Part shown: piece after piece, positions 15,015 to 64,000 of the stretch | How the letters are laid out: the number at the start of each line of letters is the position of its first letter | Numbering within the stretch: position 1 is the first letter of the stretch | Source of the DNA: Monocercomonoides exilis PA203 | Taxonomy: Eukaryota > Protista > Preaxostyla | Length of the DNA: 64,000 nucleotides | Assembly: GCA_001643675.2 (NCBI GenBank) | Contig: LSRY02000040.1 | Location: 914,992 to 978,991 of the forward strand | Direction: 5' to 3' | The notes under the pieces: model-generated | Seen by the model: the letters and a program-made list of their open reading frames with translations, nothing else | What the model was told of the DNA's origin: nothing | The model's database searches: none | Translations under genes and position numbers: made by a program

Positions 15015-15050
<36 letters not shown>

Positions 15051-21000: not shown

Positions 21001-24000
21001 TCTTCTTCTTCTTCTTCTTCTTCTTCATTATTTGAGTTATTGTTTCTAACAACAGGCATAAGAAGATGGAAGACAAAGCAAGAGCATCTGTTTAAGATGA
21101 TTGTGTGTTTGTCTATTTGAAGATGAGACACAAAGAGAAGATTTTGAATGAGGCGGAGGAGAGAAGAGGAGAAGAAGAGGATGAAGAGAGATGGGGAAGA
21201 GGAGGAGGTGGAGAGAGAAAAAGGACTGAAGGGAGAACAAGATGATGAAGAAGATGATGAAGGAGAAGGAGAAGGAGAATGAGAATGAGAAAGAGAAGAA
21301 GAAATTGATTTATTTTTCATCCTTTTATTTCCTCCTTTCTCTTCCTTTGCTCTTGTTACAATCTCCCCGAATTCAAACAAACCTTCACAGAAGTTTGTGT
21401 CAAACAAGAAGATTTCCAATCCATTTTTAAAAGCAGACGTTCTTTCAGAGAAAGAGAGGAAGAGGATGAGGGAACAACAACAGACTGAAAGCAAGAGGAG
21501 AGTGTTGTTGAGGGAAGAAGAGCATTCAGAGAGATAGAGAGAGGAGAAAGAAGAGAAAGAGGAGAGAGAAGAAAGAGGGGAAAGAGAAGAAGAGAATGAA
21601 GGAGAAGAGAGAGAAGAAGAAGAAGTTTCATTAATGTGATTATTATTGTTGTTTTTTGATGAGATATCATCATTTAGAGTGATATTTGAGAATTTATTGT
21701 ATTCTTCATTGAAGACATGATTATGATTGCACAAGATAACTCTTTCTATCAGCTCCTTCTCTTTCATCATCCTTTCATTCTCTTCTTCTTTTTCTTTTTC
21801 TTTTTCTTTTTCTTCTTCTTTCTTTTCATCACTTCCCTTCTTCTTTTCCTTCTTCATTGAATTGAAATGTTCTTCCATCATCTCTTCCATCTCTTCTCTT
21901 CTTGTCTGATACGAATACCTCTTCACTACAAGTTTAGCTTCATCATTCCTCCTCTTTCTTTCTCTTTCTCTTTTTCCTTCTTCTCTTTTATTTCCTTCTT
22001 CTTCTTCTTTTTCTTCCTTTCCTCTCCCCAATCTCTTCACAATCCTTGTAATTGCCTTTATTCCCTGATTATCCACACAGCATGCATTGAACAGAGCAGA
22101 AATGGCCGAAGAAGAAGGAGTGGTGAAGGAGATGTTGAGTGTGGAAGAGAGGAGAAGGCAGAGGAGAGAGAAAGAAGAGGAGAGGAGAGGAGAGAGAAGA
22201 GGGGAGAGTGCGAAGAAGGGAAGAGAAGAAGAAGAAGAGGAAGAAGATGATGATGATGATGAATTATTTTGTGATATTTGATTGTTATTTACTTCTTTCT
22301 CCTTCTCTTTCTCTTTCCTTTCTTCTTCTTCTTCTTCTTCTTCTTCAGCATTTGTGGCGATGTTGATGAAAGAGAGGAGAGAAGAATAAACTTTGCTGTT
22401 GATACATTCAGTTGTGAAACAGGATGATTTCATACTCAATGAAGATGAAAGGGAAGGAGAAGGAGAAGGAGAAGAAAGAGAAGAAGAAGAAGATAAAGAA
22501 GAAGAGGAGGAGGAGGAAGAAGAAGAGGAGGAAGAAGAAGAAGAAGAATTAGAATGTTTATTAGATGGATGGGATATAAGTAATAAAGCCAAAGTGAATA
22601 AATGTCCAAATGAAATGAACATTCTGCTGATGTTTTCTATTTCAATTTCAGATGAATCTATTTGGTTGGTTGATGTATTGTCATTTGATGAGGAAGAAAG
22701 AGAAGAAGATGAAAGAGGAAAGGAAGAGGAAGAAGAATTTGAAGAAGAAGAAGAAGAAGATGATGATGATGATATATTTGTTTGTTTCTTCCATAAAGAT
22801 TTCCAATGTTTCAGAATATTTGAAGTTATTTCACTGGATTTATCAATAAGACATATGAGAAGATGAAGAAATGAAGAAGAAGAAGAGGAAGAAGTAGAAG
22901 AATAAATTGAAGAAGGAATTTTTGAATCGCAAAGAAGAAGAAGAAAATCCGGAGAAGAACATAAATGTGTGAGTAAAGCAAGAGAATTAAGAAGTTCATG
23001 AGAAATTTGTGGAAGAGAAGAAGAAGAAAATGAAGAAGAAGAAGAAGAAGAAGATAAAATAGAAGAAGAGAGAGACAAGAAATGAGGGAGAAGAAGAGAA
23101 AGGAGAGAAGAGAGAGAAGGAAGAAGAGAAGGAGGAGGATGGAAGATGAGAAGCAAGGAAAGACAAATTGGTTTGTATTTGATGGAATCAGAAGAAGAAG
23201 AAGATGATGATGATGATGATGATAAAGTGTGATTATTCTCAATAGAATTCTTTGATTTATCACTTTCATTGGAAAGAGATGAAAGTGAATAAATCTTCAT
23301 CAAATGGCAAAGCAACGGCAGAAAATGAAACTTCGGAGAAATTGGAAGAATACCCTCAACCACAATATTTTCCAAATCCTTCTTTTTCAATTCTATTTCT
23401 CCGGACTTTTTTGCTGGCAGCCCGAAAATTCCGCTTTTTGCTTTGTTTTCTCTTTTTCCTGCTTCTTCTCTTTCTCTTCTGATTTCTTCTGTCTCTTCAT
23501 TCAACAAACAATTCATTAAATTAGTTTGTTCTCTTTCTCTTTCTCTTTCTCTTTCTTTGTCTTTATCTTTATCTTCATTTGAAGAAGAAGAAGAAGAAGA
23601 AGAAGAAGAAAGAGAAGAAGAAGAATTTGAAGAAGAAAGAGGAAGAATGTTATTTCTGGCAGAAGCGACAGAAAGAGCACGAGACATTCTTCTGTTTCTG
23701 AGGCCAGGGGGAAGATGAGAGAGAGAAGAGGCAAAAGAAGAGAGAGGAGAAAGAGGAGAAGATGATGATGAAAGAGAAGAAGAGGAAGAGGAAGAAGAAG
23801 AAGATAATGATGAAGAAGATGGAATTAAATATGAATAAGCAGAGAAGGAAGAAGAAATAGAAATGACAGAAGGAAGAGAAGAAGAAGAAGAAGAAGAAGA
23901 AGAAGAGCAATTAGAGATGAAAAGAGAAGCAACATTTAACATTTGTTTCCAATCATCTTCATTGAATGGAAGAGGAATAGCATCTTTGTTCTCAAATGAA

Positions 24001-27000
24001 GAAGAAGAGGAAGAAGAAGAAGAAGAAAGAGAAGAAGAGGAAGAGGAGGAAGAGGAAGAAGAGGAGGAGGAAGAAGAAGGATATGATAAGCCAAGCAATC
24101 TTCTTCTTTCTTTGCCTGCACGTGGATACACACAAACATCTCTATTTATTTCTCTTTCTCCTCTTTCTCTTTCTTCTTCTTCTCTTTCTTTTCTTCTTTT
24201 ATTATTATTATTATTATTTATTCTTCTTCTTCTTCTTCTCCATTTGTTTATTTCTCTCTCGTATTCTTCCTCTTCCTCTTCTTCTTCTTCTGTTATGTTT
24301 CCATTCTCTTTCTTTTGAATAAGAGAAGACAAAATGTTATCAGAGAAAGAAGAAGAAATCGCACGAAGGAGAGAGAAAGAGAGGAAAGAGGAAGAAGAAG
24401 AGAGAGAAGAGAGAGGAGAAAAGGGAGAGAAAGAAGAAGAAGAAGAAGAAGAAAGAGAAAGGGGAGAAGAAGAAGAAGAAGAAAAGATGAAGATATCAGA
24501 AGAATTGAATGAGATGGCAGAAGAAGAAGAGAAAAGAGGATGAGAAGAAATGGTTGAAGCAAAACGATATCCAAATGAAGAGGAAGAGGAGAAGAGAGAA
24601 GAAGAAGAAAGAGAAGAGGAAGAGGAAGAAGAAGAAGAAGAAGAAAGAAATGAATTTTCATCGATTAAGCAGAGAAGGGCAATGATAAGAAGAGGGAGAG
24701 AAGAAGGAGAAGAAGACAAAGAATAAAATGGATGAAGATTGGAAGAGAGAGAAGAGAGAGAAGAAATAAAGGAAGATAAATTAGAAGAAGAAGAAGAGGA
24801 GGAGGAGGAGGAGGAAGAAGAAGAAGAAGAAGAAGAAGAAGAAGATAATTTCTGATGAGAGAGTAGAGAATAAGAGAGGATGAAAGGGAAGAGATGGCAG
24901 AGAAGAAGAAGAGAAGAAGCAACCATTTGGATGTCTTTGTCTGTTGAAGAAGAAAGGCTGAATCCTTTGAGAGAGAGAGGAGAAGAAGAAGAAGGAGAAG
25001 AAGAAGAAGAAGAAGGAGAAGAAGGAAAAGAAGGAGAAGGAGAAGGAGAAGAAAGAGGAAGGAGAGGAAGGAGATGTTTGAGGAGGAGAGAGAGAATGAC
25101 AGACACACGAACACATCTCTCTTCATCACACAAATCAATCTTTTTGAATGAAAAGAGAGGAGGAGAAGAAGAAGAAGAATTTGAAGAGGAAGAAAGATGA
25201 GAAGAGGAAGAAGAAGATGAAGAAGATGATGATGATGATGAAGGAGAGGGAGAAGAAAGAAGAGAAGAAGAAGAAGAAGAAGAAATAGAAACTTTTGATT
25301 CATCAGCATTATCATCATTAAATGTATTGTTTTCTTCGTTTTTCATATTTTCCTCTTTCATTTCCGTGTTTGGCACTTCCAAATTAAGCATCTGACAGCA
25401 TTCTTTGATGAAGAAGAAGTCAATAATTCCTTCTTCTTCTCTCTCTTTCAACAAATTCTTCATTCTTCTGATTTCTTCTTCTTCTTCTTCTTTCTTCTCT
25501 TTCTCTTTCTCTTTCTCTTTCTCTCCTACTTTTTCTTTCATCTTTTTCTCCTTTTCTTTCTCCTTTTCTTTCTCCTTTTCTTCTTCCATTTTACTCTTCT
25601 TCCTCTCTTCTTCTTCTGCTTTTGCTTTTGCTTCTAACATCTTTCTCTCTTTCTCTTCTCTTTCTCTTTCTCTTTCTCTTTCTCTTTCTTCTTCCAATTC
25701 TCTTCTTCTTCTCTCTTCTTCTTCTCTCTTCTTTCTCCTCTCCTCTTCTTCTTTCTTCCTTCTTTCTTCTTCTTCTTTCTCTTCTCTTTCTCTTCTTCTG
25801 TTCTCTTCTATTTGTCTTTCTAACTCTTTCTGTAATTTTTCCTCTTCTTTCTTCCTTTCTTCTTCTCTTTTCTTTCTTTCCTCTTCTTCCTTTCTCCTTC
25901 TCTCCTCTTCCTCTTTCCTTCTCCTCTCCTCCTCTTCTCTCATCTTTCTTTCTTCTTCCTCTTTCTTCTTCTTCTCTTCTTCTCTTCTCTTCCTTTCTTC
26001 CTCCATCTTCTTCTTCTCTTCTTCCTCTTTCTTCTTCCTCTCTTCTTCTCTCTTCTTCCTCTCTTCTTCCATCTTTCTCATTTCTTCTTCTGCTTTCCTC
26101 TTCATCTCAATGCTTGCTGCTAATTTTGCTTGCTCTTCTAATTCTCTTCTTCTCTTCTCTTCTTCTTCTCTCTTCTTCTTCTCTTCTTCTTCCCTTTTTA
26201 TTCTCTCTTCTTCTCTTCTTCTTTCCTCTTCTTTCCTTCTTTTTCCCTCTTCCTCTTCTTTCTTCTTTCTTTCTTCTTCCAACCTCTTTCTCTCTTCTTC
26301 TTTCCTTTTTTCTTCTTCTCTTCTCTTCTCCTCTTCCTCTCTCTTCTTTCTCTCTTCTTCCATTCTCTTTCTCTTTTGTTCTTCTAATTGCCTTTTAAGT
26401 TCTTCTTCTTCTTTTCTTCTTCTCTCTTTCTCTTCCTCCCTCTTCTTCCTTTCTTCTTCTTCTCTTTTTCTTCTTTCTTCTTCCTCTTTCTTCCTCTTTT
26501 CCTCTTCCTCTTTTCTTAATCTTTCCTCTTCTTCTCTCTTCTTCTTTTCTTCTTCTTCTCTTCTCTTTCTTTCCTCTTCTTCCCTTTTTCTTCTCTCTTC
26601 TTCTTTTCGTTTTCTCTCTTCTTCTTCTTCTTCTCTTCTCTTCCTTTCCTCTTCTTCTTTTCTCCTTCTTTCTTCCTCTTCTCTCTTTTTTCTTTCTTCC
26701 TCTTCCTTTCTCTTCTTCTCTTCTTCTTCTCTTTTCTTTCTTTCCTCTTCCTCTCTTCTCTTCCTTTCTTCCTCTTCTCTCTTTTTTATTTCTTCCTCTT
26801 CTTCTTTCCTTTTCCTTTCCTCTTCTTCTCTCTTCTTTCTTTCCTCTTCCATCTTTCTCATTTCTTCTTCTGCTTTCCTTTTCATCTCAAGATCTGTTGC
26901 CATTTTCGCTTGTTCTTCTAATTCTCTTCTTCTCTTCTCTTCTTCTTCTCTTCTTAATCTTTCTTCCTCTTCCCTTTTCTTTCTTTCTTCCTCTTCCTTT

Positions 27001-27543
27001 CTCCTTCTCTCCTCTTCCTCTTTCCTTCTTCTCTCCTCCTCTTCCTTTCTCATTCTTTCTTCTTCCTCTTTCTTCCTCTTCTCTTCCTCTTCTCGTTTCG
27101 CTCTCTCTTCCTCTTCTTTCTTCTTCCTTTCCTCCTCCTCCTTTCTTAATCTATCTTTTTCTTCTTCTTCTTTTCGCTTTCTTTCCTCTTCTTCTCTTTC
27201 AATTCGTTCTTCTTCCTCCTTCTTCTTCCTCTCCTCCTCGGCTTTTCTTTCTGCTTTTTCAATTTTCTCCTTCTCCTTCTCCTTCTCTTCTTCTTCCTTC
27301 TTCTTTTTATCTTCTTCTTTCTCTTTTTCTTTTTCTTTTTCTTCCTTCTCTTTCTCCTTCTCTTTCTCCTTCTCCTTCTCCTTCTCCTCAGATACTGTTG
27401 ATGCTGTTGTAACAAGCCCAGAAAATGCACTCGGAGTGTTCAAACTGACTGTTGCTTTGACAGTCGTGAAGACAGAACTCTCTCTTCCACTCTGCATTTC
27501 ACTTGATAATGAAGAAGAAGAAGAAGAAGAAGAAGAAGAAGAA

Positions 27544-27579
<36 letters not shown>

Positions 27580-28570
27580 GAGTCAGAAGAGCTTATTTCT
27601 CCTTCTCTCACGTAGCGCATCTTCTCCTCTGGCTTCTTCTTCCAATTTTTGCTCACTTTCTCTCCGTTCAGCTTGCTCAGCTTTCCCTTCAGAAAGCAAC
27701 CAAAGAAAAGATGATGTTGCCACAGTCCATCCGGATATGAGTCAAAAAAGGGGTTTCCTGTCAAATCGAGTGCTGTTAGCACTTTGAACTGGGCAAGGAC
27801 AGCGAAGACTTCCTCAAACTCTTCCAGATCCCAGTCGAATTCGTTGTATGACAGATCCAACGCAATCAATTTTGGAGCGGTGGGGAAGAGAGGGGCAAGA
27901 GATCCAGAAATAGCGTTATGAGAAAAATTCAAGATGGTGATGTTTTTAAAGGCATCAAAGCGAGGAAATGCTGGGATCTGGTGTCAAACATTTGGTAAAA
28001 ATATTTCGCAATCATATTTGATTTTTTTTCAAATGTGATATGTTATTCATTGAATTAAGAAAAGTTTCCAAGTAAAAAAGAAATGGCAAACTCTGTTGTG
28101 TTGTGCATATAGTTCTTCCAATGAGGGAACCCCGTCAATGTCAAGATCCGATATTTCATTGCGATCAATCCACATTCTGCGAAGCTTCTCAAATCCAGCT
28201 TTTGTTCCAACTTGATCTCTGCTTGCTTCTCGAATAGAAAATCGTGAAACTTTGTTCCCTCTTTTGTCAATTTGTTAAATAAATGGTAATAATTCTGAAG
28301 AATATTCATTTTTGAAATTTCAAACCCAATGTCAATTTCTTTTACAAAACCAACCGGAACAACCATTCCCAGGCCTTCTACTGAATTGATCATAAATTGA
28401 CCTTTTCCTTTTTGCTGACAATCGTTGTTAAAGCAAAGGTATATTGGATATTTTTTCATTAGATGTTTGTTCTTTGAAACAAGTTCTTTCAAAGTTTCTA
28501 AGTCCAACTGAAGTACAGTTGTTCCAGTAAGTTTAATGCATGAATGCTTATGATTGCTTCGATCACTCAT
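12882..28570 (-). CDS. Giant (~5,169 aa) N-terminal LRR protein with a long E/R/K single-alpha-helix rod and poly-Ser inserts (exons 28570-28326, 28260-28092, 27977-12882)
   Basis: Splicing introns 28261-28325 and 27978-28091 (both GTTTG..AG) gives continuous LRRs: VKEIDIGGNKVS, LRRMWIDRNEIS, LEELYAQHNRIP, ITILNFSHNAIS, LIALDLSYNEF and LTALDLTGNPF. The last exon is 15.1 kb with no stop. Confidence 0.85.
25430..27390 (-). repeat. Coding low-complexity E/R/K repeat (e.g. EEERKKR)n with an internal ~40-codon duplication
   Basis: RRRELEEQAK(M/L)A....EMKRKAEEEMRKMEEERKKREEE occurs twice, at ~26825-26945 and ~26045-26165. Confidence 0.85.
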
Positions 28571-28688: not shown

Positions 28689-29444
28689 ATGATTCTTTTG
28701 ATATTGTTTACTGTTGCGTTTTCTTTTGGCCACGATGGTGCTCTTGTTAATTCTGAGTTAAATGCTTTGCGATATGGCATTGATATTTCTTCTTGGCAAA
28801 GTACATTTGATGGATCTAAAGCCAAAGCTAATGGAGTGAAGTTAGTTATTTGCAGAGCTGGGCATGCATTAAACAAGGATAAATGCTGGGAAGCATTCAC
28901 AGCATCTGCGTTGAAAAATGGACTTGAACTTGGAGCATATCATTTTGCCACTTTTCATTTTACTGATGTTTCGAAAGATTATACCACTGCTCTTGCAAAT
29001 GCAAAAAATCAGGCGAATTGGTTTTTAAGTATTCTGAAAACAGCAAAAATTAATTCATATGTTGCACTTGATTTCGAAATGGAAAATGGTCATTCCATGA
29101 ATCTTAATGCTGCCCAAGCAACCGAGTGCATTTTGGCTTATATGAATATTATTAAAAATGCAGGATACAAGCCAATTCTATACAGTGGTGCAAGCATGCT
29201 GTATTCATCTGTTAATGTTACAAAAATTATGCAGCAATATCCATTGTGGTGTGCATACTACTTTAAATACGGAACGGCAATGGACTTCCCGATGTGGGAT
29301 GGCTCGTTCCCAAACACAACCTGGGGTAAAAGGATGCAAGCATGGAAGAGCAGCATCAAAATGTGGCAATTTACTTCTGAAGGATATGCCAAAAAGTATG
29401 GATGCGGAGGTACAAATTTGGATAAAGACTATTTGTACTTTTAA
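28689..29444 (+). CDS. Secreted glycoside hydrolase family 25 lysozyme (muramidase), 251 aa, intronless
   Basis: Hydrophobic signal peptide MILLILFTVAFS. GH25 motifs GIDISSWQ, GAYHF, ALDFE (DxE), PILYS, LWCAYY, MWQFTS.G and a terminal LDKD. Confidence 0.92.
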   Translation: MILLILFTVAFSFGHDGALVNSELNALRYGIDISSWQSTFDGSKAKANGVKLVICRAGHALNKDKCWEAFTASALKNGLELGAYHFATFHFTDVSKDYTTALANAKNQANWFLSILKTAKINSYVALDFEMENGHSMNLNAAQATECILAYMNIIKNAGYKPILYSGASMLYSSVNVTKIMQQYPLWCAYYFKYGTAMDFPMWDGSFPNTTWGKRMQAWKSSIKMWQFTSEGYAKKYGCGGTNLDKDYLYF

Positions 29445-37811: not shown

Positions 37812-40443
37812 TCTGCTTGTTATTAAAAATATTCAAAAAGAGGTGCAAAGCCTGGTAAATAAAAAAATAAAAGATAAATACAAACATAACTGATTATCTT
37901 GCAAAATAAAAACGTTCGCAATACAAACAGTTAAATTTTTGCTTAATAAAAAGAATTGTAAAAGAAAGTGCAAAAAATCCACAAGAATTGGCTGTATGAA
38001 GAAAGAAATGGAAATTTTTTGTTTCTTTTTGATCAAACCAATAAATTATTTAAAGAATGATTTTTATTAAATAAAAAATCATTAACTATTTGAATCACAT
38101 CTTTTTGTCCAATGGAATTAATAGCAAATACTTTAGCAAAGAGGAAAAGAAATCTGGCAGATTGAATGAGCGAACGGAAGATGTTTTTAGTTGTTTTTTG
38201 TGGAGAAGAATGAGTCTGAAAACAAGAACAGATGGTTGTTGATGGTTTGACATATTTTGTGGATTGTGTCATTTTGAGCTCATTTGTCAATGGATCATTG
38301 GGTTGCGAAAGATGATAAGAAATGAAAATCTGAAAATCATCACAAATCGTATGAACAAAAGAAAAGAAAAGAACATGATTTTGAACATGGAGAACATGCT
38401 TGAAGTGAAGAAGAAGATCAAGGCTCCAATGCACCAATTGCCAAATAATCTTGTGCCATGAAGAAAAACAATGAAGATCTGCTCCAATAGAAAAAATGGA
38501 GATTCTTCTGTTTATTGAGAGTGAAACATCAAAAGGAAATTTATTCATTTGATTGGATGTTAAAAACAGATTTGTTCATTCAAGGCCGTTTTCATTTCAG
38601 TTGAAATGAGATTTGGAAGAAGGAGGAAGACAACTTTTCCATGAGATACACTCCAGCAACGTTATTCCTCTGCAAATGAAAGGAAGAATGGGATTTTGGA
38701 GGAAAGAAAGAAATTCAATCAAATATCAGTTTCTTTGGAATGAAGAGAACAGCTTCCTTTTTGAACAAAACACAGGAAATTATTTTGTATGCTGCAATCA
38801 ACCGTTGGTGAGTTTGGATGTTTTCAATTCATCTTCAACAACATCTGCTAAACATAGAGGGGTCAGTTATAAATGCAGCTGCTGAAACACCACATCAATT
38901 CATTATCTTTCAACGATCGGTTCCGATTCAAATAGGAATTTCTATTTGCATTTGATTTCTTCGCTCCGTCTTGATGAAACGTTTTATTCAAGTGAGCGTT
39001 GAAACGGTCTATTTGCTCATCATATGATATGAAATGAGACACTGATAGCTCAGCTTCCCGAATAATAAAGAAACAAATACTTCTTTTTCCATGAAGAGCA
39101 GTTTACATCGAAAAGGCTCAGAATCATCCCAGGCATCACCTGCAATGTCGTCATCATCTTCCTATTTTTCTTCTATTGCATAATCATTATTGCTATCACA
39201 ATTTCTGTTGTCATTCTTTTCATCAGTTTCTTCTTCCTCTCCTCCGCCGCGATCAAATTCTTCTTCGAATTCTTCATTGCATCCAACTTCTGCATCTTTG
39301 CTGGATCATTCAACAGAGAAGACAACTAAATGCTCAAAACATATCACTATATAGGCTTCAGGAAATGAAAACAAAGAAATTGACAAAATGATAATGAAAA
39401 TTTGGAAGGAAGGAAAAAGAATAGGTCAGAAACAGAAATAGAAGAGTGTGATGAAGACGATGATTTAATAGATTGAAAAGGATTGAAAAGGGAGATATTT
39501 GAATTGTTTCAGGAAGACGAACAAGGAGGTTGCGTTTGGAGGATTGCGACATTGCATCGTTAAAGGATAAATTTATTAATTTTTTAATATTTTTTAATAT
39601 TTAATTTTATTTCATTTTTAAAGAAAAATTGCTCAATCTTTTAAGAGCCCAAAATAAAAATTATTTTAGCTTCAAACAAGCAAATTGAATTATGCGCGTA
39701 TTCAGTGAAATGAAATGAAAAAATAAATAAATAAATAAATAAAACCATTCATATAAAACACAAAACTCAAAGCAATTAATAAATATTGGTGATCGAAAAG
39801 AGATTTACAACAATTAAAAGATTTTTATCATTTATGCTTTTTGCATAATTGAAATAAAACAGCGAAAGCTAAAAAGAAATACTTTGGATAAAAAATGACA
39901 TTAAAAAAGAAGAAAAGAAGAATCATAAACATAAAAAGAAAGCAAATCAAAATGAAAATTTGTTGTTAAAAAGCGAGAATTCTTGATTCTCTTTCAAAGA
40001 AATACAAATAAATGAAAATCGTCAAGTTTTGAGCGAACGAAATCGAGCAAAGCTTTCAATGAAGATAAACAAATATCACTTCAGAAAACAAAAGTCTCAC
40101 AAATAAACAAACACGTAACACATACAAAAATTAAAGAGGCATAAATCAAGTTAAAAAACAAGTTCTCTCTCAGATGCTTATCATGAGAAGTACAAATTAT
40201 TCCATAGAAAAAACGAGCTTCTGAGGAACAAAATAAAAAAAAAATAAAATAAAAATAAAAAATAAAATAAAATAAAAAATCAAAAAATAAATGAATAATA
40301 AAAAAATTATGAGAGAGAACTTCAGTTTTTATTTTTCGACTTTTAAAAAAAAAATGCCTCAAAAACGGCCAATCCTTTGCGGCCAAAAAATCTGGGCGAA
40401 GAAGACTTTATATACACAAAAAGAGAATTACAACATATCACAC

Positions 40444-43400
40444 TTACAGATCGTCATTATTATCATTATTGTCATTATTATCATTGTTATCATTTTTTGT
40501 GCCATTCATATCCGTCCCGTAGACGGCATCTGCAAATGTGATATCTTCATCCGTGAAGTGCATATCAAACAGCGAAACCAGCTTCCTCTTCCCTACTGCC
40601 CTCACTGCAGCATTCTTTGAGCGTATCTGGTCGCCAATCAGCGTCAGCCGCTGCCTCAACAGCAAATGCTCTCTCTTGTGCTTCTCTATCCCCTCGTAAT
40701 TTCTCGCTGTCATTTCTCTCTCCTCCTCGTTGAACACAGCAAATGCAGTCGACGAAAGCTGGTAGAAAGCAGATACAATTGCTTCATATTGCTCGTTCTG
40801 ATTGATTGATGTCAGCAGTTGCTGCGCGTTGTCGAGAATTGCCTCTCTTCCTTTGTCGAATGAGTCGTGCCCTGTCACCATCGATGACATCATCACAATC
40901 TCCTTCTCGCCTTCTTTGATCGGCAGCAGAGCTAACAGCTTCCCAGACACATTTTCGATGAACGCAATCTGCCCTACCCACACCAGCCCGTTGGCAAACA
41001 TTGAAACAAGAAACAAGACGCAAAATACCACAATAACAGCAACCAGAATAGTTACGGATTCCTGCACCTCTTCCTTTCCTGAGGTCAAAATCATGTTCGT
41101 CATCTTGTTTATACCTGCAACAATATCATTTCTGAGTCCATTCAGAATGAATCTTGCTTCCGGGGTAAGAAACGTGATGTTCTCAACTTCCATCTTTGAA
41201 ATTCTCTGCAAATTTATTCTCATCCTTGACAGCAGAGCTGCGAGACCAGAAATGGTCCCGGTCAATCCATATATCCGCATTGGATCCACCTGAGAGCAGT
41301 CATCAGATTCCGCAAGGAAGCATTCTGTATCGTCCAGCAACGTCACTTGATTAAAGTCACTCTTCATCCGCGACACAGTCACTGAATCGTATGTGACATC
41401 GTCTGCGTGCGAATACTCTGAATCTCCGAAGTGGCACCCCAAATGCACCGCCTCGAAGTATTTGGACATCGGAACCAGCATGTTGCGTGCAATGAGTGGA
41501 TCACCAGAGCAATGGGACGAGTTGTGCATGACCGGATTGTTTGCTCTAGGAAACGTGATTGATTGGTCTGTCTTCAGCAGCGGAAGAGGCTGAAGAATTG
41601 ACGTAAGCAGAAACTGGATCTGGAACAGAATTGAAGCACGCATTCCAGAAAGAATGATGTTAGCACAGGTTGGCTTGTAATTGCTAACATATACACACAC
41701 CAAAGCAATTGTCACTCCAACCGCAATAACACCAAGAATCGAAGACAGAACTGTTGCAATCCTGATTCTTGCGTTGATCGGACTTGGAAGCTGCTTGTAT
41801 GCTGCTTCGTGCTTCTCTATCTCCTTTTCCATTTGCTCTTCCCAAGTTGCATCCTCAACTGCATTCCTGATCAGTCCCATCAGCTTGTTTTTTTCAGATT
41901 CGTCGCTGTCATCGTCATCATACAGGTATTTTGTGTCAACAATGCCAATTTGCCGGATTGGCTGTGTCTGCTCAGGAGTCACATTAATATCCGATGCGTT
42001 TTGTTCTGCTTTTGTTGGTGCTTCATTCACAGCAGGCATCGGGGGAGGCACATCAATCTGTGGAAGCGATGGGTTTTGGCCAAACATCATTGGATTTTTC
42101 TGTTGATATAAATTTGTTGGTGACAACGGGGGCATTATCTGCGTCGAGTTGAAAATAGACCCCGTTTCGTATTCAGACATCGTGTGCTGGATGGAGAACG
42201 AGGCTGTGGACATCAGCCCAAAGTGGGGCTGGTTATTATTTCCATTGTTGTTAAGGTTTCCGCCTCCGTTATTTGAAAAGAGCTGTGGCATGAGAAGAGG
42301 AGTTTGTGACATGTTGTTCATGTCATCGTCCTGGTTGATGGCAAGCGGTTTGCTCATTTGCACCCCACCAAATGTATTTCCACCAAACATCGGAGACAAT
42401 TGCCCCTTAGACATATTTCCAGCTTGAGCGATGTTTAACCCAAATAGCCCAGCATCTTCTTCTGCATTCTTTGCCATTCCTGTCACTTCGGGCTCAATTT
42501 TCGGCTTTCCAAAAGAAGGATCAATATTCGACAGCAATGGGTGCGTTGATTTTATTGTTCCATTTCCTTGTTCATTCATTTGTGCTCCCTTTGCGTTCTC
42601 CTCGCTGACTGTTGGCATTTGCAATTGCAATCCAGCAGTGGAAGGAATCGGCGTAAGATGATCTGCAAACAGTGAATGAGAAGATGAAAGCGAAAACGGA
42701 GAATCCCCAATTGAATCCATCGAAGGACCCGCACCTGAAAGCATGGAAGTTGCAGATTTTTCATTAGAAAGCTCTATTTCGGGTGAGTTTTGTTTCAGAG
42801 AAGCTTTCCTTTTCTGCTGTGATTCCATCAATGTTTGTGAAACAAACATTGGATGCGCATTGATTTCACCCAGTCCTTTGCCACTCAGATGAGATGCCTG
42901 CAGAGAATTGCACACAATTTTCGATTGACTGTCTCCTTGCCCACTTTCACCTCCTCCTTCTTGCAAAGCAGATGCACCAGGATCTTCCAAGAACTCTCCA
43001 TTGTGGTTGTTATCACCGTTGTGCATGTCGTTGTTGTCCAAGTAGTTGTCGTATGTCTTCGTCTCCATGCTCTCCCCCATCTCAATGTTGATCGTAAAGT
43101 CGTCCTCTTCGTCTTCACCTCTCAGAAGTCTGCGAATGACACTCTGCATCTTGTTCTTCGGCATGTCCAGCATGGTCTGATACGCCCTCATCCGGTTCTT
43201 CACTGCGGATCTGTTGAATTTTAGAAAGAGAATAAGCTGGATGATTGTAAGAGGAATAAGAAAAACAGCGATTATAACAGAAAAGACAATGATGATCTGG
43301 TTGCATTGTGTGTACATAAGGTTGAAGTAATAAATGATGACTCTTTTCGCTCCTTCCAAGATCGGCACAGGGCAATTGAATACCAAATATTGTATATTTG

Positions 43401-46223
43401 ACATGTATTCGGGGTCATCAGGACGGGAAGATATGTTCGAAAGATACAAATGGTGAGTGATCTGCGAAACAGTCGCAAGCACCTCCAACATCGACGATGA
43501 GCGGAGCGTCTGCCTTTTGATGTCTATCACCTCCGTTGTCTCTCCGTCCTGTTCCTCTTCCTTTGTGGTCATCGTGAAGAAATACGTGCTGACGTCTGCT
43601 GTCTCCCACACCTCCAAGTTTGTGGTTGACTGGTGGATTCTGCCGAGCATAGAGGCCAGGCTTTCTGATGTATCATCCATCATCTTCAGCAGATCTTTCT
43701 TCTGAATCATTCCTGATGGCCACTTATCTGAAGAAGTCGGGGTTGTGAAGTTGTACCTTTTGTCGTACACAAAGAAGTTGTACCCGATTGTGGCTGAACG
43801 CGCTGAATGATATGACAAGTCGCACACATTCCGCAGCGTTTGCAGGTTGCTCTGATACGAATTCGTCATAATGATATACACAACCAGGGCTGCCACAAGC
43901 ACACCAACGTTGATGAAATTCAATGCGATAACTGTGCATTTCAGTGCTGCAATGTTGCTTTCATGATTCCCGTGCTCGCCGTGCCCTCCCATCACCAGAT
44001 CGACAATCGCTGCTTCTTTCTTCTTTTTCTTTCTCCTCCTCCGATTTGTTGTGCGATGCCTTCTCATCCCACTCGAAGACTGCTGCCATTGCGCCTCGCT
44101 TCTCGCAAGAGATTCGCGATCTCCTTCCAAATTCTGCGCTTCCAATGAAGAACCCTCTGCTCCTTTGTCTCCATTGGTGCCATCCTTAACGCTCCCTGTA
44201 TTCACCTCAAAGCTTCCCCGCCTCACAACGCGAGGCATATTCGCCTCATGCTCTGCACCCGTCCTGTCTCCCCCTGCGCTTCTCCTCCCGCTCATCTCGT
44301 ATGCCTCTCCCATCCCAAACGACCCATCGTGGAAGCCTCCAGCGTGTGTATGTGCCATCGACTCGCTGGATCCGTAGTCCTCTTCAATCTGCTCTGCCCG
44401 GTTCAGAATCATCTCTGCCTCATCTTCGTCGTCGTATATGTCCAGCAGCAGCCGAGCATAGCTCCGCAGCACACCTGTGTTCTGTCCATGCGAAGCAATC
44501 AGCTCTTCGTAGCTTTTTCTAGCAACACTCTCGTCCTTCACAATCGAATTCAACAGAACAGGAATCGCCTTGTAGTCTGGCTGGATAGCTGTCGCGTTCT
44601 CAAAGAAGTCCTTCATCGCACTCACAGCCTGCTCGTGGTGCTTCTCTGCCTTTGCCAGCAGCGTCGTGAAGGCAAACGAGTTCATGTTGCCTGCCCCGTT
44701 CCCGCCGTTTTGCCCATTTGCGCGCCCTCCGTTCTCTTTTGCCTTGCAGAACAGCACAAAGTTCAGAAACATGCCCGGAGAAAGCGACCGGGCTTTTTGG
44801 ATGAGCGTGTTTGACTTCATGTAGTTTTTGCGGTAGGCAGACAGAAACGTCGCATACTGGAAGCACAGCATGCTGTTGTTCGTGTTCGTCTTCAGTGCTT
44901 GAGTGTACACGTAATCCGCAAATGTCAAATACATCATCGAATCATATTCTTTCTGTTGTATAAAGCGAAGGGATGGCTCCACTCTTTCTGGATTCCTCAA
45001 AGGAGGCAGAGCCAAAGAAGGATTTTTCATGCAAATATCGGACAGCTGGTTGCCAAAGGCTGTTAAAAGATACTTTTTCTCTCTCATCTTTCGGCCAATC
45101 TTGGGCAACAGCACTGCACAAGCAACAATTCCCGCTATTAGTCCAACAACTTGAAGCACAATAGTAATAATCCAGTTGTCTGTTGCTCCTTCAATTGCAT
45201 ACAGAATTTCGTCTATAAGTCTCAAACATCCAAATATGCACCATTTACTGCCCATAAGCAGATTTCCATTCAGTTTGTATATCGGCTGAATATACACAAA
45301 ATACACCATCATCACCAGAGAAGATCCAACAGTTACCACTCCGCGCCAGAATGGCCATTCAATCAGTGTTCTCATCGCAAACACACATCCAAACACAAGT
45401 GACGAGTCCACCGCTTGCCACAGCCCACTTGGCGATGACCATAGCCCACCATGCTTCGGATTATGGTTGAAAATCATGTTGTTTATAAATATTGAAGATA
45501 TTAGAAGAACAATAAGAACCAGCATTGACACAATAAATCCCAAAAACGATAACAATGAACCCGAGCAACTGCCTTCAAATCCCCGATGGACCATTTGTCC
45601 TTCGGATTTATAGCAATCAAATATAGTTATGCATATCGAAGTCAATGGGATAAACAAGATGGTGTATGTAAAGTTCACAAGCCAGCGCAAAAGTGAAATG
45701 ACCCACGGCTGCGAGCCAGAAATAACGCCTTGAAAAATCGCTGTAACCGCTATGTATATAATGAGCAATGCCAAATATCCTGCGCATCCTATTATTACAA
45801 ACGAAACGTAATTTCCTGCTAAATATCCAAGAGACGTTCCATCTGGAAAGCCAACGCACTAACAGTCGCATGAATAAAAAATTTAACCCCAAAAAATATG
45901 CATTCATCAAGTTCAGGATTGCGGAATGATAAATAAATCACAATGGAAAAAATACAAAGATGAAAATCGCAAACCAAAGAAACTGTATTCACTTTTTGCG
46001 TGGAAACGTCAACTCGAAAGAAACTGAGTGTAATCATCTGAAGCACTGTGAATGCCCATACGAAAATTTCCCATGTTTTGCTCGGATGTTTCGGTTGATG
46101 GTAAATAGGTGAAAAAAATGAAAATCCAACTGTTTCCAGTTTACTGAAACCTTCTGCTTGAGCATATTCATTCGTCATCCCACTTGATGTCGAACACATC
46201 GACATGCTCTCTTCGCTGGCCAT
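40444..46223 (-). CDS. TmcB/TmcC-like multi-pass membrane protein with a TPR-like region and a C-terminal hemerythrin-like domain (~1,887 aa; exons 46223-45975, 45858-40444)
   Basis: Intron 45859-45974 (GTTTG..TTAG) joins the ORFs in frame. There is an N-terminal block of about 9-10 hydrophobic helices and a TPR-like YEELIASH.QNTGVLRSYARLLLDIYDDEDEAEMILNRAEQIEE typical of TmcB/C. Two further TM-loop-TM modules follow. The C-terminus has TGHDSFD...FNEEEREM...Y....HKREH...HFTDED, which is hemerythrin spacing. Confidence 0.8.
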
Positions 46224-60585: not shown

Positions 60586-61259
60586 CAGAAGAGTGCAGAG
60601 CAGGCATATCCAGGAGCACATGGCGAGGGTATCTGTATGGATTTGCTCATTTTGGAAAACAATGGAGAGAGTGTGGACATGGAAGAATACCGGAGTCTAT
60701 TCAAGAGTGGGCCGCATGTTGTGCAAATGTGTTTCTATCGCTTAGGAACGGTGGCATGAAGTTAACTTGCCTTCAATTGACAAGGGCAGCAGTATCGCTT
60801 TACTCCAATATTGTATTCTCTTCCTTCCTTGGAGACATCCCTATTATTCGTACCCTTTTTAGATCGTTCCGAAGGACGGACAAGTCAAGAAAGAAGAAGA
60901 CAGGAGACATTTGGAATCCTCGAATAGTGCTTGAGTTCTTTTCTGGCCTGGGACCAAATGAAGGGTTAAGCTTTAAACAGCTCACTATGAAAGTGATTGT
61001 TCTAACGATGTTGTTTTCAGCTTGTAGATTCACGGAGCTCGAGAGGATCAATATGTTGGAAAGCAGGTTTGAGGAGGAAGGCGTGTATTTGGACACAAAG
61101 TTGAAGACCTCAAACACACGCACGGAGATTGCTGTTCCGTTCTTACCAGAACTGAGTTTGATTTGTCCCGCATCAGCGATCCAGGAATTGTGGAAAAAAG
61201 TCCAAGAGAAAAACAGTCACACAGACAAATTGCTTCTTAACACAGAGAAACTAGGTTAG
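59796..61259 (+). CDS. DIRS tyrosine recombinase ORF overlapping pol in another frame, truncated before the HxxR/Tyr catalytic residues
   Basis: Core-binding region STWRGY...F..F, then IWNP.IVL, LSFKQLTMKVIVL, SACRFTEL (catalytic Arg), KLKT (Lys) and ICPASAI. The stop codon is supplied by the first telomere repeat. Confidence 0.88.
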   Translation, partial: PQSIPPQSEIAIVQFQGTNGSISCSEPLLTNPSGTSRVLSSPKIGQYIRGVQHKQMECREEASTSAEEIMETKTRSRHRVESVTCSRCTEHKSRCVITTGESRRLRGAGRRMGKDNDETKHCSNAGRVCSATQSQSGKMVRNRKSACRRRTDVSLEERSRVSSSTDPACDSDDPESTTGESTSDITPAELEGTELGELVKVHSPFGMDLEESEGGSAEGSIDAMDRCESSTRSIEDNLAECTLCDEEQWWKNALEQKSIPFSLAEECRAGISRSTWRGYLYGFAHFGKQWRECGHGRIPESIQEWAACCANVFLSLRNGGMKLTCLQLTRAAVSLYSNIVFSSFLGDIPIIRTLFRSFRRTDKSRKKKTGDIWNPRIVLEFFSGLGPNEGLSFKQLTMKVIVLTMLFSACRFTELERINMLESRFEEEGVYLDTKLKTSNTRTEIAVPFLPELSLICPASAIQELWKKVQEKNSHTDKLLLNTEKLG

Positions 61260-63893
61260 GGTTAGGGTTAGGGTTAGGTTAGGGTTAGGGTTAGGGTTAG
61301 GGTTAGGGTTAGGGTTAGGGTTAGGGTTAGGGTTAGGGTTAGGGTTAGGGTTAGGGTTAGGGTTAGGGTTAGGGTTAGGGTTAGGGTTAGGGTTAGGGTT
61401 AGGGTTAGGGTTAGGGTTAGGGTTAGGGTTAGGGTTCAAACTAGGTTAGGGTTAGGGTTAGGGTTAGGGTTAGGGTTAGGGTTAGGGTTAGGGTTAGGGT
61501 TAGGGTTAGGGTTAGGGTTAGGTTAGGGTTAGGGTTAGGGTTAGGGTTAGGGTTAGGGTTAGGGTTAGGTTAGGGTTAGGGTTAGGGTTAGGGTTAGGGT
61601 TAGGGTTAGGGTTAGGGTTAGGGTTAGGGTTAGGGTTAGGTTAGGTTAGGTTAGGTTAGGGTTAGGGTTAGGGTTAGGGTTAGGGTTAGGGTTAGGGTTA
61701 GGGTTAGGGTTAGGGTTAGGGTTAGGGTTAGGGTTAGGGTTAGGGTTAGGGTTAGGGTTAGGGTTAGGGTTAGGGTTAGGGTTAGGGTTAGGGTTAGGGT
61801 TAGGGTTAGGTTAGGTTAGGTTAGGTTAGGGTTAGGGTTAGGGTTAGGGTTAGGTTAGGGTTAGGGTTAGGGTTAGGGTTAGGTTAGGGTTAGGGTTAGG
61901 GTTAGGGTTAGGGTTAGGGTTAGGGTTAGGGTTAGGGTTAGGGTTAGGGTTAGGGTTAGGTTAGGGTTAGGTTAGGGTTAGGGTTAGGTTAGGGTTAGGG
62001 TTAGGTTAGGGTTAGGGTTAGGGTTAGGGTTAGGGTTAGGGTTAGGGTTAGGGTTAGGGTTAGGTTAGGGTTAGGGTTAGGGTTAGGGTTAGGGTTAGGG
62101 TTAGGGTTAGGGTTAGGGTTAGGTTAGGGTTAGGTTAGGGTTAGGGTTAGGTTAGGGTTAGGGTTAGGGTTAGGGTTAGGGTTAGGGTTAGGGTTAGGGT
62201 TAGGGTTAGGGTTAGGGTTAGGGTTAGGGTTAGGGTTAGGGTTAGGGTTAGGGTTAGGGTTAGGGTTAGGGTTAGGGTTAGGGTTAGGGTTAGGGTTAGG
62301 GTTAGGGTTAGGTTAGGGTTAGGGTTAGGGTTAGGGTTAGGGTTAGGGTTAGGGTTAGGGTTAGGGTTAGGGTTAGGGTTAGGGTTAGGGTTAGGGTTAG
62401 GGTTAGGGTTAGGGTTAGGGTTAGGGTTAGGGGTTAGGGTTAGGTTAGGGTTAGGGTTAGGGTTAGGGTTAGGGTTAGGGTTAGGGTTAGGGTTAGGGTT
62501 AGGGTTAGGGTTAGGGTTAGGGTTAGGGTTAGGGTTAGGGTTAGGGTTAGGGTTAGGGTTAGGTTAGGGTTAGGGTTAGGGTTAGGGTTAGGGTTAGGGT
62601 TAGGGTTAGGGTTAGGGTTAGGGTTAGGGTTAGGGTTAGGGTTAGGGTTAGGGTTAGGGTTAGGGTTAGGGTTAGGGTTAGGGTTAGGGTTAGGGTTAGG
62701 GTTAGGGTTAGGGTTAGGTTAGGGTTAGGGTTAGGTTAGGGTTAGGGTTAGGGTTAGGTTAGGGTTAGGGTTAGGGTTAGGGTTAGGGTTAGGGTTAGGG
62801 TTAGGGTTAGGGTTAGGGTTAGGGTTAGGGTTAGGGTTAGGGTTAGGGTTAGGGTTAGGTTAGGGTTAGGTTAGGGTTAGGGTTAGGGTTAGGGTTAGGT
62901 TAGGGTTAGGGTTAGGGTTAGGGTTAGGGTTAGGGTTAGGTTAGGGTTAGGGTTAGGGGTTAGGGTTAGGGTTAGGGTTAGGGTTAGGGTTAGGGTTAGG
63001 GTTAGGTTAGGGTTAGGTTAGGGTTAGGGGTTAGGGTTAGGGTTAGGGGTTAGGGTTAGGGTTAGGGTTAGGGTTAGGGTTAGGGTTAGGGTTAGGGTTA
63101 GGGTTAGGGTTAGGGTTAGGTTAGGTTAGGGTTAGGGGTTAGGGTTAGGGTTAGGTTAGGGTTAGGGTTAGGGTTAGGTTAGGGTTAGGGTTAGGGGTTA
63201 GGGTTAGGGTTAGGGTTAGGTTAGGGTTAGGGTTAGTTAGGGTTAGGGTTAGGGTTAGGGTTAGGGTTAGGGTTAGGTTAGGGTTAGGGTTAGGGTTAGG
63301 GGTTAGGGGTTCAAGCTAGGTTAGGGTTAGGGTTAGGGTTAGGGTTAGGGTTAGGGTTAGGGTTAGGTTAGGGTTAGGGTTAGGGTTAGGGTTAGGGTTA
63401 GGGTTAGGGTTCAAAGGAAACTTGGATTGAATTGGGATTGGGTTGGGGTTGGGGTTGGGGTAAGGGGTTTGAGGTTTAGGTTAGGGTTAGGGTTAGGGTT
63501 AGGGTTAGGGTTAGGGTTAGGGTTAGAGGTTAGGGTTAGGGTTAGGGTTAGGGTTAGGGGTTAGGGTTAGGGTTAGGGTTAGGGTTAGGGTTAGGGTTAG
63601 GGTTAGGGTTAGGGTTAGGTTAGGGTTAGGGTTAGGGTTAGGGTTAGGGTTAGTAGGGTTAGGGTTAGGGTTAGGGTTAGGGTTAGGGTTAGGGTTAGGG
63701 TTAGGGTTAGGGTTAGGTTAGGGTTAGGGTTAGGGTTAGGGTTAGGGTTAGGGTTAGGGTTAGGGTTAGGTTAGGGTTAGGTTAGGGTTGGGGTTGGGTT
63801 GGGTTAGGGTTAGGGTTGGGTTGAGGGTTAGGGTTAGGGTTAGGGTTAGGGTTAGGGTTAGGGTTAGGGTTAGGGTTAGGGTTAGGGTTAGGG

Positions 63894-63934
<41 letters not shown>

Positions 63935-64000
63935 GGTTAGGGTTAGGGTTAGGTTAGGGTTAGGGTTAGGGTTAAGGGTTAGGGTTAGGGTTGGGGTTGC
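61252..64000 (+). repeat. Telomeric array (TTAGGG)n with TTAGG and TTAGGGG variants
   Basis: About 2.75 kb of G-strand repeats run to the end of the window. Confidence 0.99.

What the first reader, a model, noticed from the sequence alone, without database searches (positions are those of the whole stretch)
40515..40890. Membrane receptor-like protein ending in a hemerythrin domain that lost exactly the O2-binding iron's histidines
Seen: the C-terminus reads TGHDSFDKG-R-EAIL...AFA-V-FNE-E-EREM...NYEGIEK-H-KRE-H...DM-H-FTDE-D. Known: in hemerythrin, Fe1 is bound by His73/His77/His101, the O2-binding Fe2 by His25/His54, and Glu58/Asp106 bridge the two. Here the His25 and His54 equivalents are Arg and Val, while all three Fe1 histidines and both carboxylates are kept. 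Inference: loss of only one metal site suggests a repurposed mononuclear metal/redox/NO sensor rather than decay. It is fused to a TmcB/TmcC-like scaffold, a family usually paired with PAS or cyclase domains. This may be an undescribed gas- or metal-sensing receptor in a probable anaerobe.
Basis: partly seen in the sequence, partly recalled or inferred. Interest (0 to 1): 0.8.

Follow-up and report, generated by a model that had tools for sequence, protein, structure and literature searches.

The report
Membrane protein with half-site hemerythrin tail
A transcribed gene of the mitochondrion-less gut protist Monocercomonoides exilis encodes a large membrane protein whose inner tail is a true hemerythrin fold. 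It keeps the ligands of one iron but has lost both histidines of the oxygen-binding iron. It is one copy of a large oxymonad gene family that may sense metal or redox state; this function is untested.

Summary
Window 40516-40908 (-) encodes the C-terminal 131-aa domain of a two-exon, 1887-aa TmcB-type polytopic membrane protein of Monocercomonoides exilis, about 21 kb from a telomere.

The domain is a real hemerythrin relative:
- A profile of 12 paralogue tails hits canonical bacterial hemerythrins at E 1e-7 to 1e-4 in 1.8 billion proteins.

The His25 and His54 equivalents are Arg and Val. Glu58, His73, His77, His101 and Asp106 are kept.

This is not decay:
- dN/dS is about 0.12.
- RNA contigs cover the tail.
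- In 59 unique relatives from three oxymonad genera, the five kept ligands rank 2, 3, 6, 7 and 9 of 131 columns for conservation. Arg is 95% conserved. The His54 position is almost free.

The same genome also holds TmcB proteins with complete seven-ligand hemerythrin tails. At least 45 of 69 TmcB loci carry such a tail, so this gene is a derived variant of a family architecture.

Metal content and sensing are inference only. The scan has already reported this family from other parts of the same genome (42 notes). I found no paper describing it, although relatives carry hemerythrin labels in public databases.

The parts
45975..46223 (-). Exon 1 (83 codons, ATG at 46223): N-terminal cytosolic stretch and first hydrophobic segment
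   Evidence: tblastn of paralogue N-termini gives 94% identity to MONOS_15451. Sequence read.
45859..45974 (-). 116-nt GT..AG intron
   Evidence: Sequence read. RNA-library contigs of four runs (one study) join 45858 to 45975 with ends CT..AC on the + strand. Three of the four joint contigs carry paralogue-like differences at 46013 and 46034. The X4 contig has no differences there, but only 18 of its letters lie on the shorter side of the joint.
40447..45858 (-). Exon 2 (1804 codons): rest of the TmcB-type membrane protein, ending in TAA at 40444-40446
   Evidence: Open frame. An exact RNA contig at 40345-40666 runs through the stop without splicing.
44377..44694 (-). TPR_TmcB domain (PF25474)
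   Evidence: Pfam E 1.3e-16, 61.1 bits against a cut-off of 27.
40993..41049 (-). Last predicted transmembrane helix (ILVAVIVVFCVLFLVSMFA), 28 residues before the tail domain
   Evidence: Kyte-Doolittle window score 3.22. The positive-inside pattern places the tail in the cytosol.
40516..40908 (-). Hemerythrin-derived four-helix-bundle tail (131 aa), the subject of the finding
40846..40848 (-). Arg codon (AGA) at the His25 (Fe2 ligand) position
   Evidence: Arg in 56 and His in 3 of 59 unique relatives.
40735..40737 (-). Val codon (GTG) at the His54 (Fe2 ligand) position
   Evidence: The column is nearly unconstrained (V/I/A/T/Q/Y/E/S, His once), rank 82 of 131.
40723..40725 (-). Glu at the bridging Glu58 position
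   Evidence: 58 of 59 relatives, rank 7 of 131.
40666..40680 (-). HKREH: His73 and His77 equivalents (Fe1 ligands)
   Evidence: Both invariant in 59 of 59, ranks 2 and 3.
40543..40560 (-). HFTDED: His101 (Fe1) and bridging Asp106 equivalents
   Evidence: His in 58 of 59, Asp in 58 of 58; ranks 9 and 6.

Best explanation
The gene encodes a TmcB-type polytopic membrane protein: about 10 predicted membrane helices, a cytosolic TPR_TmcB domain and two TM-loop-TM modules. Its cytosolic C-terminal tail descends from a bacterial-type hemerythrin domain.

Shown:
- The fold and the homology.
- Replacement of both Fe2 (O2-binding iron) histidines by Arg and Val.
- Strict retention of the three Fe1 histidines and the two bridging carboxylates across three oxymonad genera.
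- Purifying selection, transcription, and complete-site paralogues in the same genome.

Inferred:
- The tail can no longer form the classical di-iron O2-binding centre.
- It most likely holds a single metal ion at the retained 3-His/2-carboxylate site. The conserved Arg side chain would reach into and neutralise the vacated Fe2 position.
- Metal occupancy or redox state would alter the N-terminal loop of the bundle. That loop changes with redox state in DcrH-Hr (PMC9388753) and here lies only 28 residues after the last membrane helix. The change could thereby regulate the membrane protein or a partner bound to the clade-specific RQRLT surface of helix C.
For: Homology and fold:
- The A1 profile hits 190 proteins at E <= 1e-3 in 1.8 billion. 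These include about 100 canonical 130-140-aa hemerythrins with all seven ligands.
- The best PDB sequence hit is bacteriohemerythrin 4xpw, E 0.008, with Arg and Val aligned to its two His.

Selection:
- Median dN/dS is 0.12 among 18 close copies, with saturated dS.
- The tail is 69% identical among paralogues, against 33-37% in the low-complexity linkers.
- The five retained ligands rank 2, 3, 6, 7 and 9 of 131 columns; Arg ranks 14; the His54 position ranks 82.

Family context:
- The tail profile gives at least 38 matches in this genome.
- Canonical seven-ligand tails occur on TmcB paralogues.
- 45 of 69 TPR_TmcB loci have a detected tail. Four of four 'unpaired' loci that I checked by eye also have one.
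- His54 was lost in at least two separate clades.

Expression and model: exact RNA contigs and a spliced joint.

Chemistry (published): Fe1 has three His, Fe2 has two His, Glu and Asp bridge, and O2 binds at Fe2 (PMC9388753).
Against: - There are no metal, spectroscopic or functional data.
- Pfam Hemerythrin is below its cut-off for this sequence.
- No signalling output domain was found, so 'receptor' is an assumption.
- The RNA evidence is contigs from one study, and close paralogues could contribute to the 5' part.
- A hemerythrin-like subdomain without metal is known (BTSL2 H2; PMC12022348).
Confidence: 0.5

Rival explanations
1. Metal-free module. The bundle has lost metal binding altogether. 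It serves as a structural, dimerisation or partner-binding tail. The conserved His, Glu, Asp and Arg form a buried hydrogen-bond and salt-bridge network in place of the metal centre.
For: BTSL2 carries a hemerythrin-like subdomain with no di-iron centre (PMC12022348). Arg at the His25 position could pair with the two carboxylates (inference). A clade-specific, fully conserved surface motif (R85, Q86, R87, L88, T89) suggests a protein-contact role.
Against: Three histidines and two carboxylates that exactly match one metal site are the most conserved positions of the domain across three genera. A purely structural network would be expected to tolerate His-to-Gln or His-to-Asn swaps. Such swaps are common in altered bacterial hemerythrins (PMC2556348).
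Confidence: 0.25
2. Still dinuclear. A second metal is held by the bridging Glu and Asp plus water or nearby carboxylates (E61, E63, E65). This would give an open, more reactive Fe2 (or Mn or Zn) site suited to H2O2, NO or redox chemistry rather than reversible O2 binding.
For: E63 and E65 are invariant in the 12 close paralogue tails and E61 is nearly so. E63 stays 97% conserved across the 59 wider relatives. Hemerythrin-like proteins with non-canonical ligand sets still bind two metals, for example FBXL5, RIC/YtfE and mycobacterial HLPs (my own knowledge, plus the titles and abstracts listed).
Against: The EExEM motif is also present in canonical hemerythrins, so it is not a compensating change. 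The His54 position is unconstrained and often aliphatic. A cationic Arg fixed at the His25 position argues against a second cation there (inference).
Confidence: 0.15
3. Chance resemblance, or a decaying remnant of a hemerythrin domain without function.
For: The Pfam score is below the cut-off. Two ligands are missing.
Against: Profile E-values down to 1e-7 against canonical hemerythrins. dN/dS of 0.12. Ligand columns are the most conserved. The gene is transcribed.
Confidence: 0.02

Closest known systems
DcrH of Desulfovibrio vulgaris (methyl-accepting chemotaxis protein with a C-terminal hemerythrin domain; PDB 2avk, 2awc, 3whn)
   Different: DcrH has all seven ligands, a di-iron centre and an MCP signalling domain (PMC9388753). 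The window protein lacks both Fe2 histidines, is eukaryotic, has a TmcB scaffold and has no recognised output domain.
Methylococcus capsulatus bacteriohemerythrin (PDB 4xpx, 4xpw)
   Different: It is a stand-alone 131-aa O2-binding protein with the full H-HxxxE-HxxxH-HxxxxD motif.
Complete-site TmcB-hemerythrin paralogues of M. exilis (for example MONOS_2049 = L041, and L042-L044)
   Same: Same architecture: TPR_TmcB plus a C-terminal hemerythrin placed after the last membrane helix. Same genome.
   Different: They keep all seven ligands and pass or nearly pass the Pfam Hemerythrin cut-off (22.5-36.3 bits). They form a separate clade (SH-aLRT 95).
Altered-ligand bacterial hemerythrins (Bailly et al. 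2008, PMC2556348)
   Same: These are hemerythrin domains with substituted iron ligands, of unknown function. 18% of bacterial sequences fall in this class.
   Different: In bacteria most alterations are in helix C, which carries Fe1 ligands (45 of 71). Here helix C is invariant and only helices A and B, which carry the Fe2 ligands, are altered.
Eukaryotic hemerythrin-like iron sensors (FBXL5; plant BTS and BTSL2)
   Same: These are eukaryotic regulatory proteins that use hemerythrin-like bundles as sensors. BTSL2 has one metal-less subdomain (PMC12022348).
   Different: They are soluble E3 ligases with different ligand sets. They did not appear among the sequence or fold hits here.

Membership tests
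Hemerythrin / HHE cation-binding domain (PF01814) | [quoted passage not shown] | tested here: met
Hemerythrin / HHE cation-binding domain (PF01814) | Significant sequence similarity to the family | tested here: met
   The single sequence is below the Pfam cut-off (19.8 against 25.3 bits). The 12-sequence profile reaches canonical hemerythrins at E 9e-8 to 4e-4 in 1.8 billion proteins, and 4xpw at E 0.008.
Hemerythrin / HHE cation-binding domain (PF01814) | Signature H-HxxxE-HxxxH-HxxxxD (five His, one Glu, one Asp) | tested here: not met
   The window reads R-VxxxE-HxxxH-HxxxxD, which is five of seven ligands.
Hemerythrin / HHE cation-binding domain (PF01814) | Binds a di-iron centre and O2 at Fe2 | not testable with these tools
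   Needs metal analysis and spectroscopy.
TmcB/TmcC family (PF25474 TPR_TmcB) | TPR_TmcB domain above the curated cut-off | tested here: met
   61.1 bits against 27, E 1.3e-16.
TmcB/TmcC family (PF25474 TPR_TmcB) | Multi-pass membrane protein | tested here: met
   Ten to eleven hydrophobic segments by Kyte-Doolittle. This is hydropathy only, not a trained predictor.
Bacterial hemerythrin-domain sensors (DcrH, Bhr-DGC, Bhr-HD-GYP) | Hemerythrin domain fused to a recognised signalling output (MCP, GGDEF, HD-GYP) | tested here: not met
   Pfam finds only TPR_TmcB and the weak hemerythrin match.
Bacterial hemerythrin-domain sensors (DcrH, Bhr-DGC, Bhr-HD-GYP) | Complete di-iron ligand set | tested here: not met
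   Both Fe2 histidines are replaced.

The most novel reading that the evidence does not exclude
The Fe2-less tail is a new functional class of hemerythrin. It would be a mononuclear 3-His/2-carboxylate metal site with a conserved Arg filling the second metal position. It would serve as the cytosolic sensing or gating module of an oxymonad-specific family of about 60 membrane proteins, and so be a main way in which these mitochondrion-less anaerobes read metal or redox state. Complete-site and half-site paralogues would cover different signals.
Probability: 0.3. Interest if true: 0.75.

Novelty: new variant of a known kind. Interest (0 to 1): 0.6.

Why it matters
Hemerythrin domains are the known non-haem O2 and redox sensors of bacteria. 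In eukaryotes they are known mainly as soluble iron sensors (FBXL5, BTS) or O2 carriers.

M. exilis is famous for having no mitochondrion. Every hemerythrin domain detected in its genome lies at or near the end of a long open frame; most are TmcB-type membrane proteins, apart from a few truncated or broken copies. Many copies have specifically given up the O2-binding iron's ligands while guarding the other site.

If the half site binds one metal, this would be a natural experiment in converting a di-iron O2 site into a mononuclear sensor. It would also give the poorly understood TmcB family a testable regulatory module. Canonical and half-site paralogues in one genome offer matched controls for biochemistry.

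Tried and rejected
- Literature searches. 'TmcB' gave only unrelated acronyms. 'Tiny macrocysts' gave one irrelevant paper. Hemerythrin plus Preaxostyla or Monocercomonoides gave only a passing mention of hemerythrin as an O2-stress gene acquired by lateral transfer (PMC6759080). Its table S9 is not held, so I could not tell which gene was meant.
- A word search with a canonical paralogue tail found only that protein itself. A word search with the N-terminal 500 aa found only M. exilis and Streblomastix. Neither result says anything about distant eukaryotes.
- A broad HMM read-out of the ligands had shifted columns, so I discarded those ligand strings. I replaced them with a motif-anchored table and the A1-column table. 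In one search the regular expression mis-anchored 'DSFDKGR' copies, reporting 'D'. I read those by eye as Arg.
- Model coordinates are not exposed. The idea that Arg occupies the Fe2 site could therefore not be checked.
- Subtelomeric enrichment of the family was considered and dropped. About 15 of 69 loci lie within 130 kb of a contig start, against about 11 expected.
- A possible intron at the GTAAGT that overlaps the stop codon is rejected. An exact RNA contig runs through it, and the paralogues end at the same place.
- Joined spliced protein: all database searches and the fold were run by reference on exon 2 or parts of it. The joined 1887-aa model was used only inside scripts, for numbering, hydropathy and an identity profile. 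It was never sent to a search tool.

Full report
**What is there**

The window is the end of contig C37 of the 82-Mb, 101-contig Monocercomonoides exilis assembly. A (TTAGGG)n tract runs from 61254 to 63998. The finding lies in a long minus-strand open frame, 40444-45774 in the ORF list. That frame is open for 1804 codons.

tblastn with paralogue N-termini, together with the sequence itself, gives a two-exon model:
- exon 1 at 46223-45975 (83 codons)
- a 116-nt GT..AG intron at 45974-45859
- exon 2 at 45858-40447
- a TAA stop at 40446-40444

The product is 1887 aa.

Contigs from four RNA libraries of one study support the model:
- They join 45858 to 45975.
- They lie without mismatch on 40345-40666, which runs through the stop. 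The GTAAGT overlapping the stop is therefore not used as a splice donor there.
- They lie without mismatch on 40657-40864 and 40899-41095, inside the tail.

Three of the four junction contigs carry two paralogue-like differences, so they may come from the near-identical 5' end of MONOS_15451. The X4 contig has no differences there, but only 18 of its letters lie on the shorter side of the joint.

**Checking the observation**

Pfam finds TPR_TmcB clearly (61.1 bits). It finds Hemerythrin only below its cut-off: 14.8 bits on the whole frame, and 19.8 against 25.3 on the last 200 aa.

I therefore built a profile from the window tail and 11 M. exilis paralogue tails (57-82% identical by BLASTP).
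- Against PDB sequences, the best hit is Methylococcus bacteriohemerythrin (E 0.008). Domain Arg21 lies under its His22, and Val58 lies under the His of HFKSEE. DcrH-Hr follows over nearly the full length of the domain (E about 0.6).
- Against 1.8 billion representative proteins, the profile finds 190 proteins at E <= 1e-3. The top hits are long oxymonad proteins and fragments. From about E 1e-7 downward come some 100 ordinary 130-140-aa hemerythrins.
- Aligned to the profile, these read H,H,E,H,H,H,D at columns 21, 58, 62, 77, 81, 117 and 122. The window reads R,V,E,H,H,H,D.

The AlphaFold model is confident (pLDDT 85.7, pTM 0.80) and forms a four-helix bundle with an N-terminal loop.
- Foldseek ranks DcrH-Hr first (TM 0.82, rmsd 2.5 A over 130 columns).

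That the first two His of the motif are the Fe2 ligands is textbook knowledge. I did not find it spelled out in a held paper.

**Not decay**

- Among 18 close genomic copies, the tail has a median dN/dS of 0.12 with synonymous sites near saturation. Window-against-paralogue values are 0.03-0.24.
- The tail (69% mean identity to 12 paralogues) and the TPR region (71%) are the best-conserved parts of the protein. The low-complexity linkers are at 33-37%.
- I compared 59 unique sequences of this clade from M. exilis, Blattamonas nauphoetae, Streblomastix strix and metagenome fragments.
  - The five retained ligands rank 2, 3, 6, 7 and 9 of 131 columns by conservation.
  - Arg at the His25 position is 95% conserved; the rest are His.
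  - The His54 position ranks 82nd (V/I/A/T/Q/Y/E/S, His once).

The Fe1-type site is therefore the most strongly guarded feature of the domain. One Fe2 position has been fixed as Arg and the other released.

**Family context**

- The tail profile matches at least 38 places in the genome, nearly all of them at or near the ends of open frames of 1600-3600 codons.
- Pfam Hemerythrin finds 16 places, 13 over its cut-off, again mostly in long frames.
- Several of these tails have the complete canonical motif set (W..D.AH, HF.DEE, AHKAAH, W..HI...D). Their full frames carry TPR_TmcB as well. One is the annotated MONOS_2049.
- Of 69 TPR_TmcB loci, 45 have a detected tail 1.5-12 kb downstream on the same strand.
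- All four 'unpaired' loci that I read by eye also end in a hemerythrin-like domain with further ligand variants: Asn/Gln, His/Asn and His/His.
- No stand-alone hemerythrin gene appeared in the six-frame search.

A quick maximum-likelihood tree of the domain gives three groups:
- The Arg clade is one group (SH-aLRT 99). Three copies with His at the first position (L025-L027) are nested inside it.
- The complete-site copies form another group (SH-aLRT 95).
- A third group keeps His25 but has lost His54 (L035, L051, L052, L054).

His54 was therefore lost at least twice. One Blattamonas protein (P0064) has Arg with His54 retained, so the order of the two changes is unsettled. This tree uses a short domain and a quick search, so only the starred branches should be trusted.

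Bailly et al. counted altered ligands in 18% of bacterial hemerythrins, mostly in helix C, which carries Fe1 ligands (45 of 71 alterations; PMC2556348). The oxymonad family shows the opposite bias.

**Architecture and likely mechanism**

Hydropathy gives the following layout:
- about six N-terminal membrane helices
- the cytosolic TPR_TmcB domain
- two TM-loop-TM modules of about 200 aa each, separated by long low-complexity regions; the second loop is Cys-rich
- a last helix at 40993-41049
- 28 residues further on, the tail

Lys/Arg clusters flanking the helices place the TPR, the linkers and the tail on the same side, taken to be cytosolic. No output domain is recognised.

My reading is that the tail is a regulatory or sensing module that can no longer form the di-iron O2 site. 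The first part of that is shown only in outline; the rest is inference.
- It most likely holds one metal at the 3-His/2-carboxylate site.
- Arg would compensate for the charge at the empty Fe2 position.
- In DcrH-Hr the N-terminal loop orders and disorders with redox state (PMC9388753). Here that loop is tethered closely to the last membrane helix, which gives a plausible route for coupling.
- A clade-specific, fully conserved R-Q-R-L-T stretch on helix C suggests a partner or intramolecular contact.

The rivals are a metal-free interaction module and a still-dinuclear site with water or carboxylate ligands. The precedent for the first is BTSL2 H2 (PMC12022348). Decay or chance similarity is excluded.

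**Comparison with what is known, and novelty**

The tail works most like the C-terminal hemerythrin of the chemoreceptor DcrH. It fails the ligand signature and lacks any known output domain, so I do not file it as a member of that sensor class. It is a hemerythrin-fold homologue with five of seven ligands on a TmcB scaffold.

The only paper I found that links M. exilis and hemerythrin mentions it in one sentence as an O2-stress gene (PMC6759080). Public databases already label some relatives: 'putative hemerythrin' in Blattamonas, 'Hemerythrin-like domain-containing protein' in Streblomastix and 'hemerythrin' in JGI fragments.

This scan has already reported the same family from other parts of this genome: 42 notes, with follow-ups reaching the same half-site reading and counts of about 56-60 genes. 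My results agree and were obtained independently before that look-up.

I rate it a new variant of a known kind. It is of moderate to high interest as a family. This particular copy adds little beyond being a clean, transcribed, subtelomeric example.

**Limits**

- There are no metal data and no model coordinates.
- Topology rests on hydropathy only.
- The RNA evidence is contigs from one study.
- Eukaryotes outside the oxymonads could not be searched systematically.
- The joined two-exon protein was never sent to a search or fold tool. Those ran on exon 2 or its parts, by reference.

Noticed in passing
window 12882-27932 (-): A single open frame of 5016 codons with no Pfam family in either half. 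A giant uncharacterised protein lies next to the chromosome end.
   Followed up: partly
window 28689-29444 (+): A 251-aa ORF with a clear glycoside hydrolase family 25 (lysozyme-type) domain, E 7e-27. It is possibly a bacterial-type gene in this protist.
   Followed up: no
window 61254-63998: About 2.7 kb of (TTAGGG)n telomeric repeat at the contig end. The TmcB-hemerythrin gene ends 20.8 kb from it.
   Followed up: yes
window 44000-46223 (-) compared with P0002 (MONOS_15451; loci L008 and L009 on the same contig): The first 600 or so residues are 96-100% identical to MONOS_15451. Identity then falls to about 70-85% toward the 3' end, and the tail is 82% identical. The gradient suggests gene conversion or a partial recent duplication. 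L008 and L009 have identical tails.
   Followed up: partly
P0012 (MONOS_12628) compared with locus L011 (G000:C7:1766361-1766753): The public protein model ends in the middle of the tail with unrelated residues. The genome locus encodes an intact tail. The model is probably mis-built or comes from an older assembly.
   Followed up: partly
L033 (G000:C47:219035-219370) and L045 (G000:C25:860558-860764): These hemerythrin-tail copies have in-frame stops and short frames. They are probably pseudogenes of the family.
   Followed up: no
L025, L026, L027 (G000:C2:90960, C58:1199955, C58:1644283): Three copies have His, not Arg, at the His25 position. They are nested inside the Arg clade, next to the Arg-bearing L023 and L024. 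This is either retention or an Arg-to-His reversal.
   Followed up: partly
L056 (G000:C14, TPR at 903833) and L058 (G000:C10, TPR at 166482): TmcB genes that the tail profile missed still end in hemerythrin-like domains with other Fe2-position variants: Asn/Gln and His/Asn. The family-wide count of tails is therefore a lower bound.
   Followed up: partly
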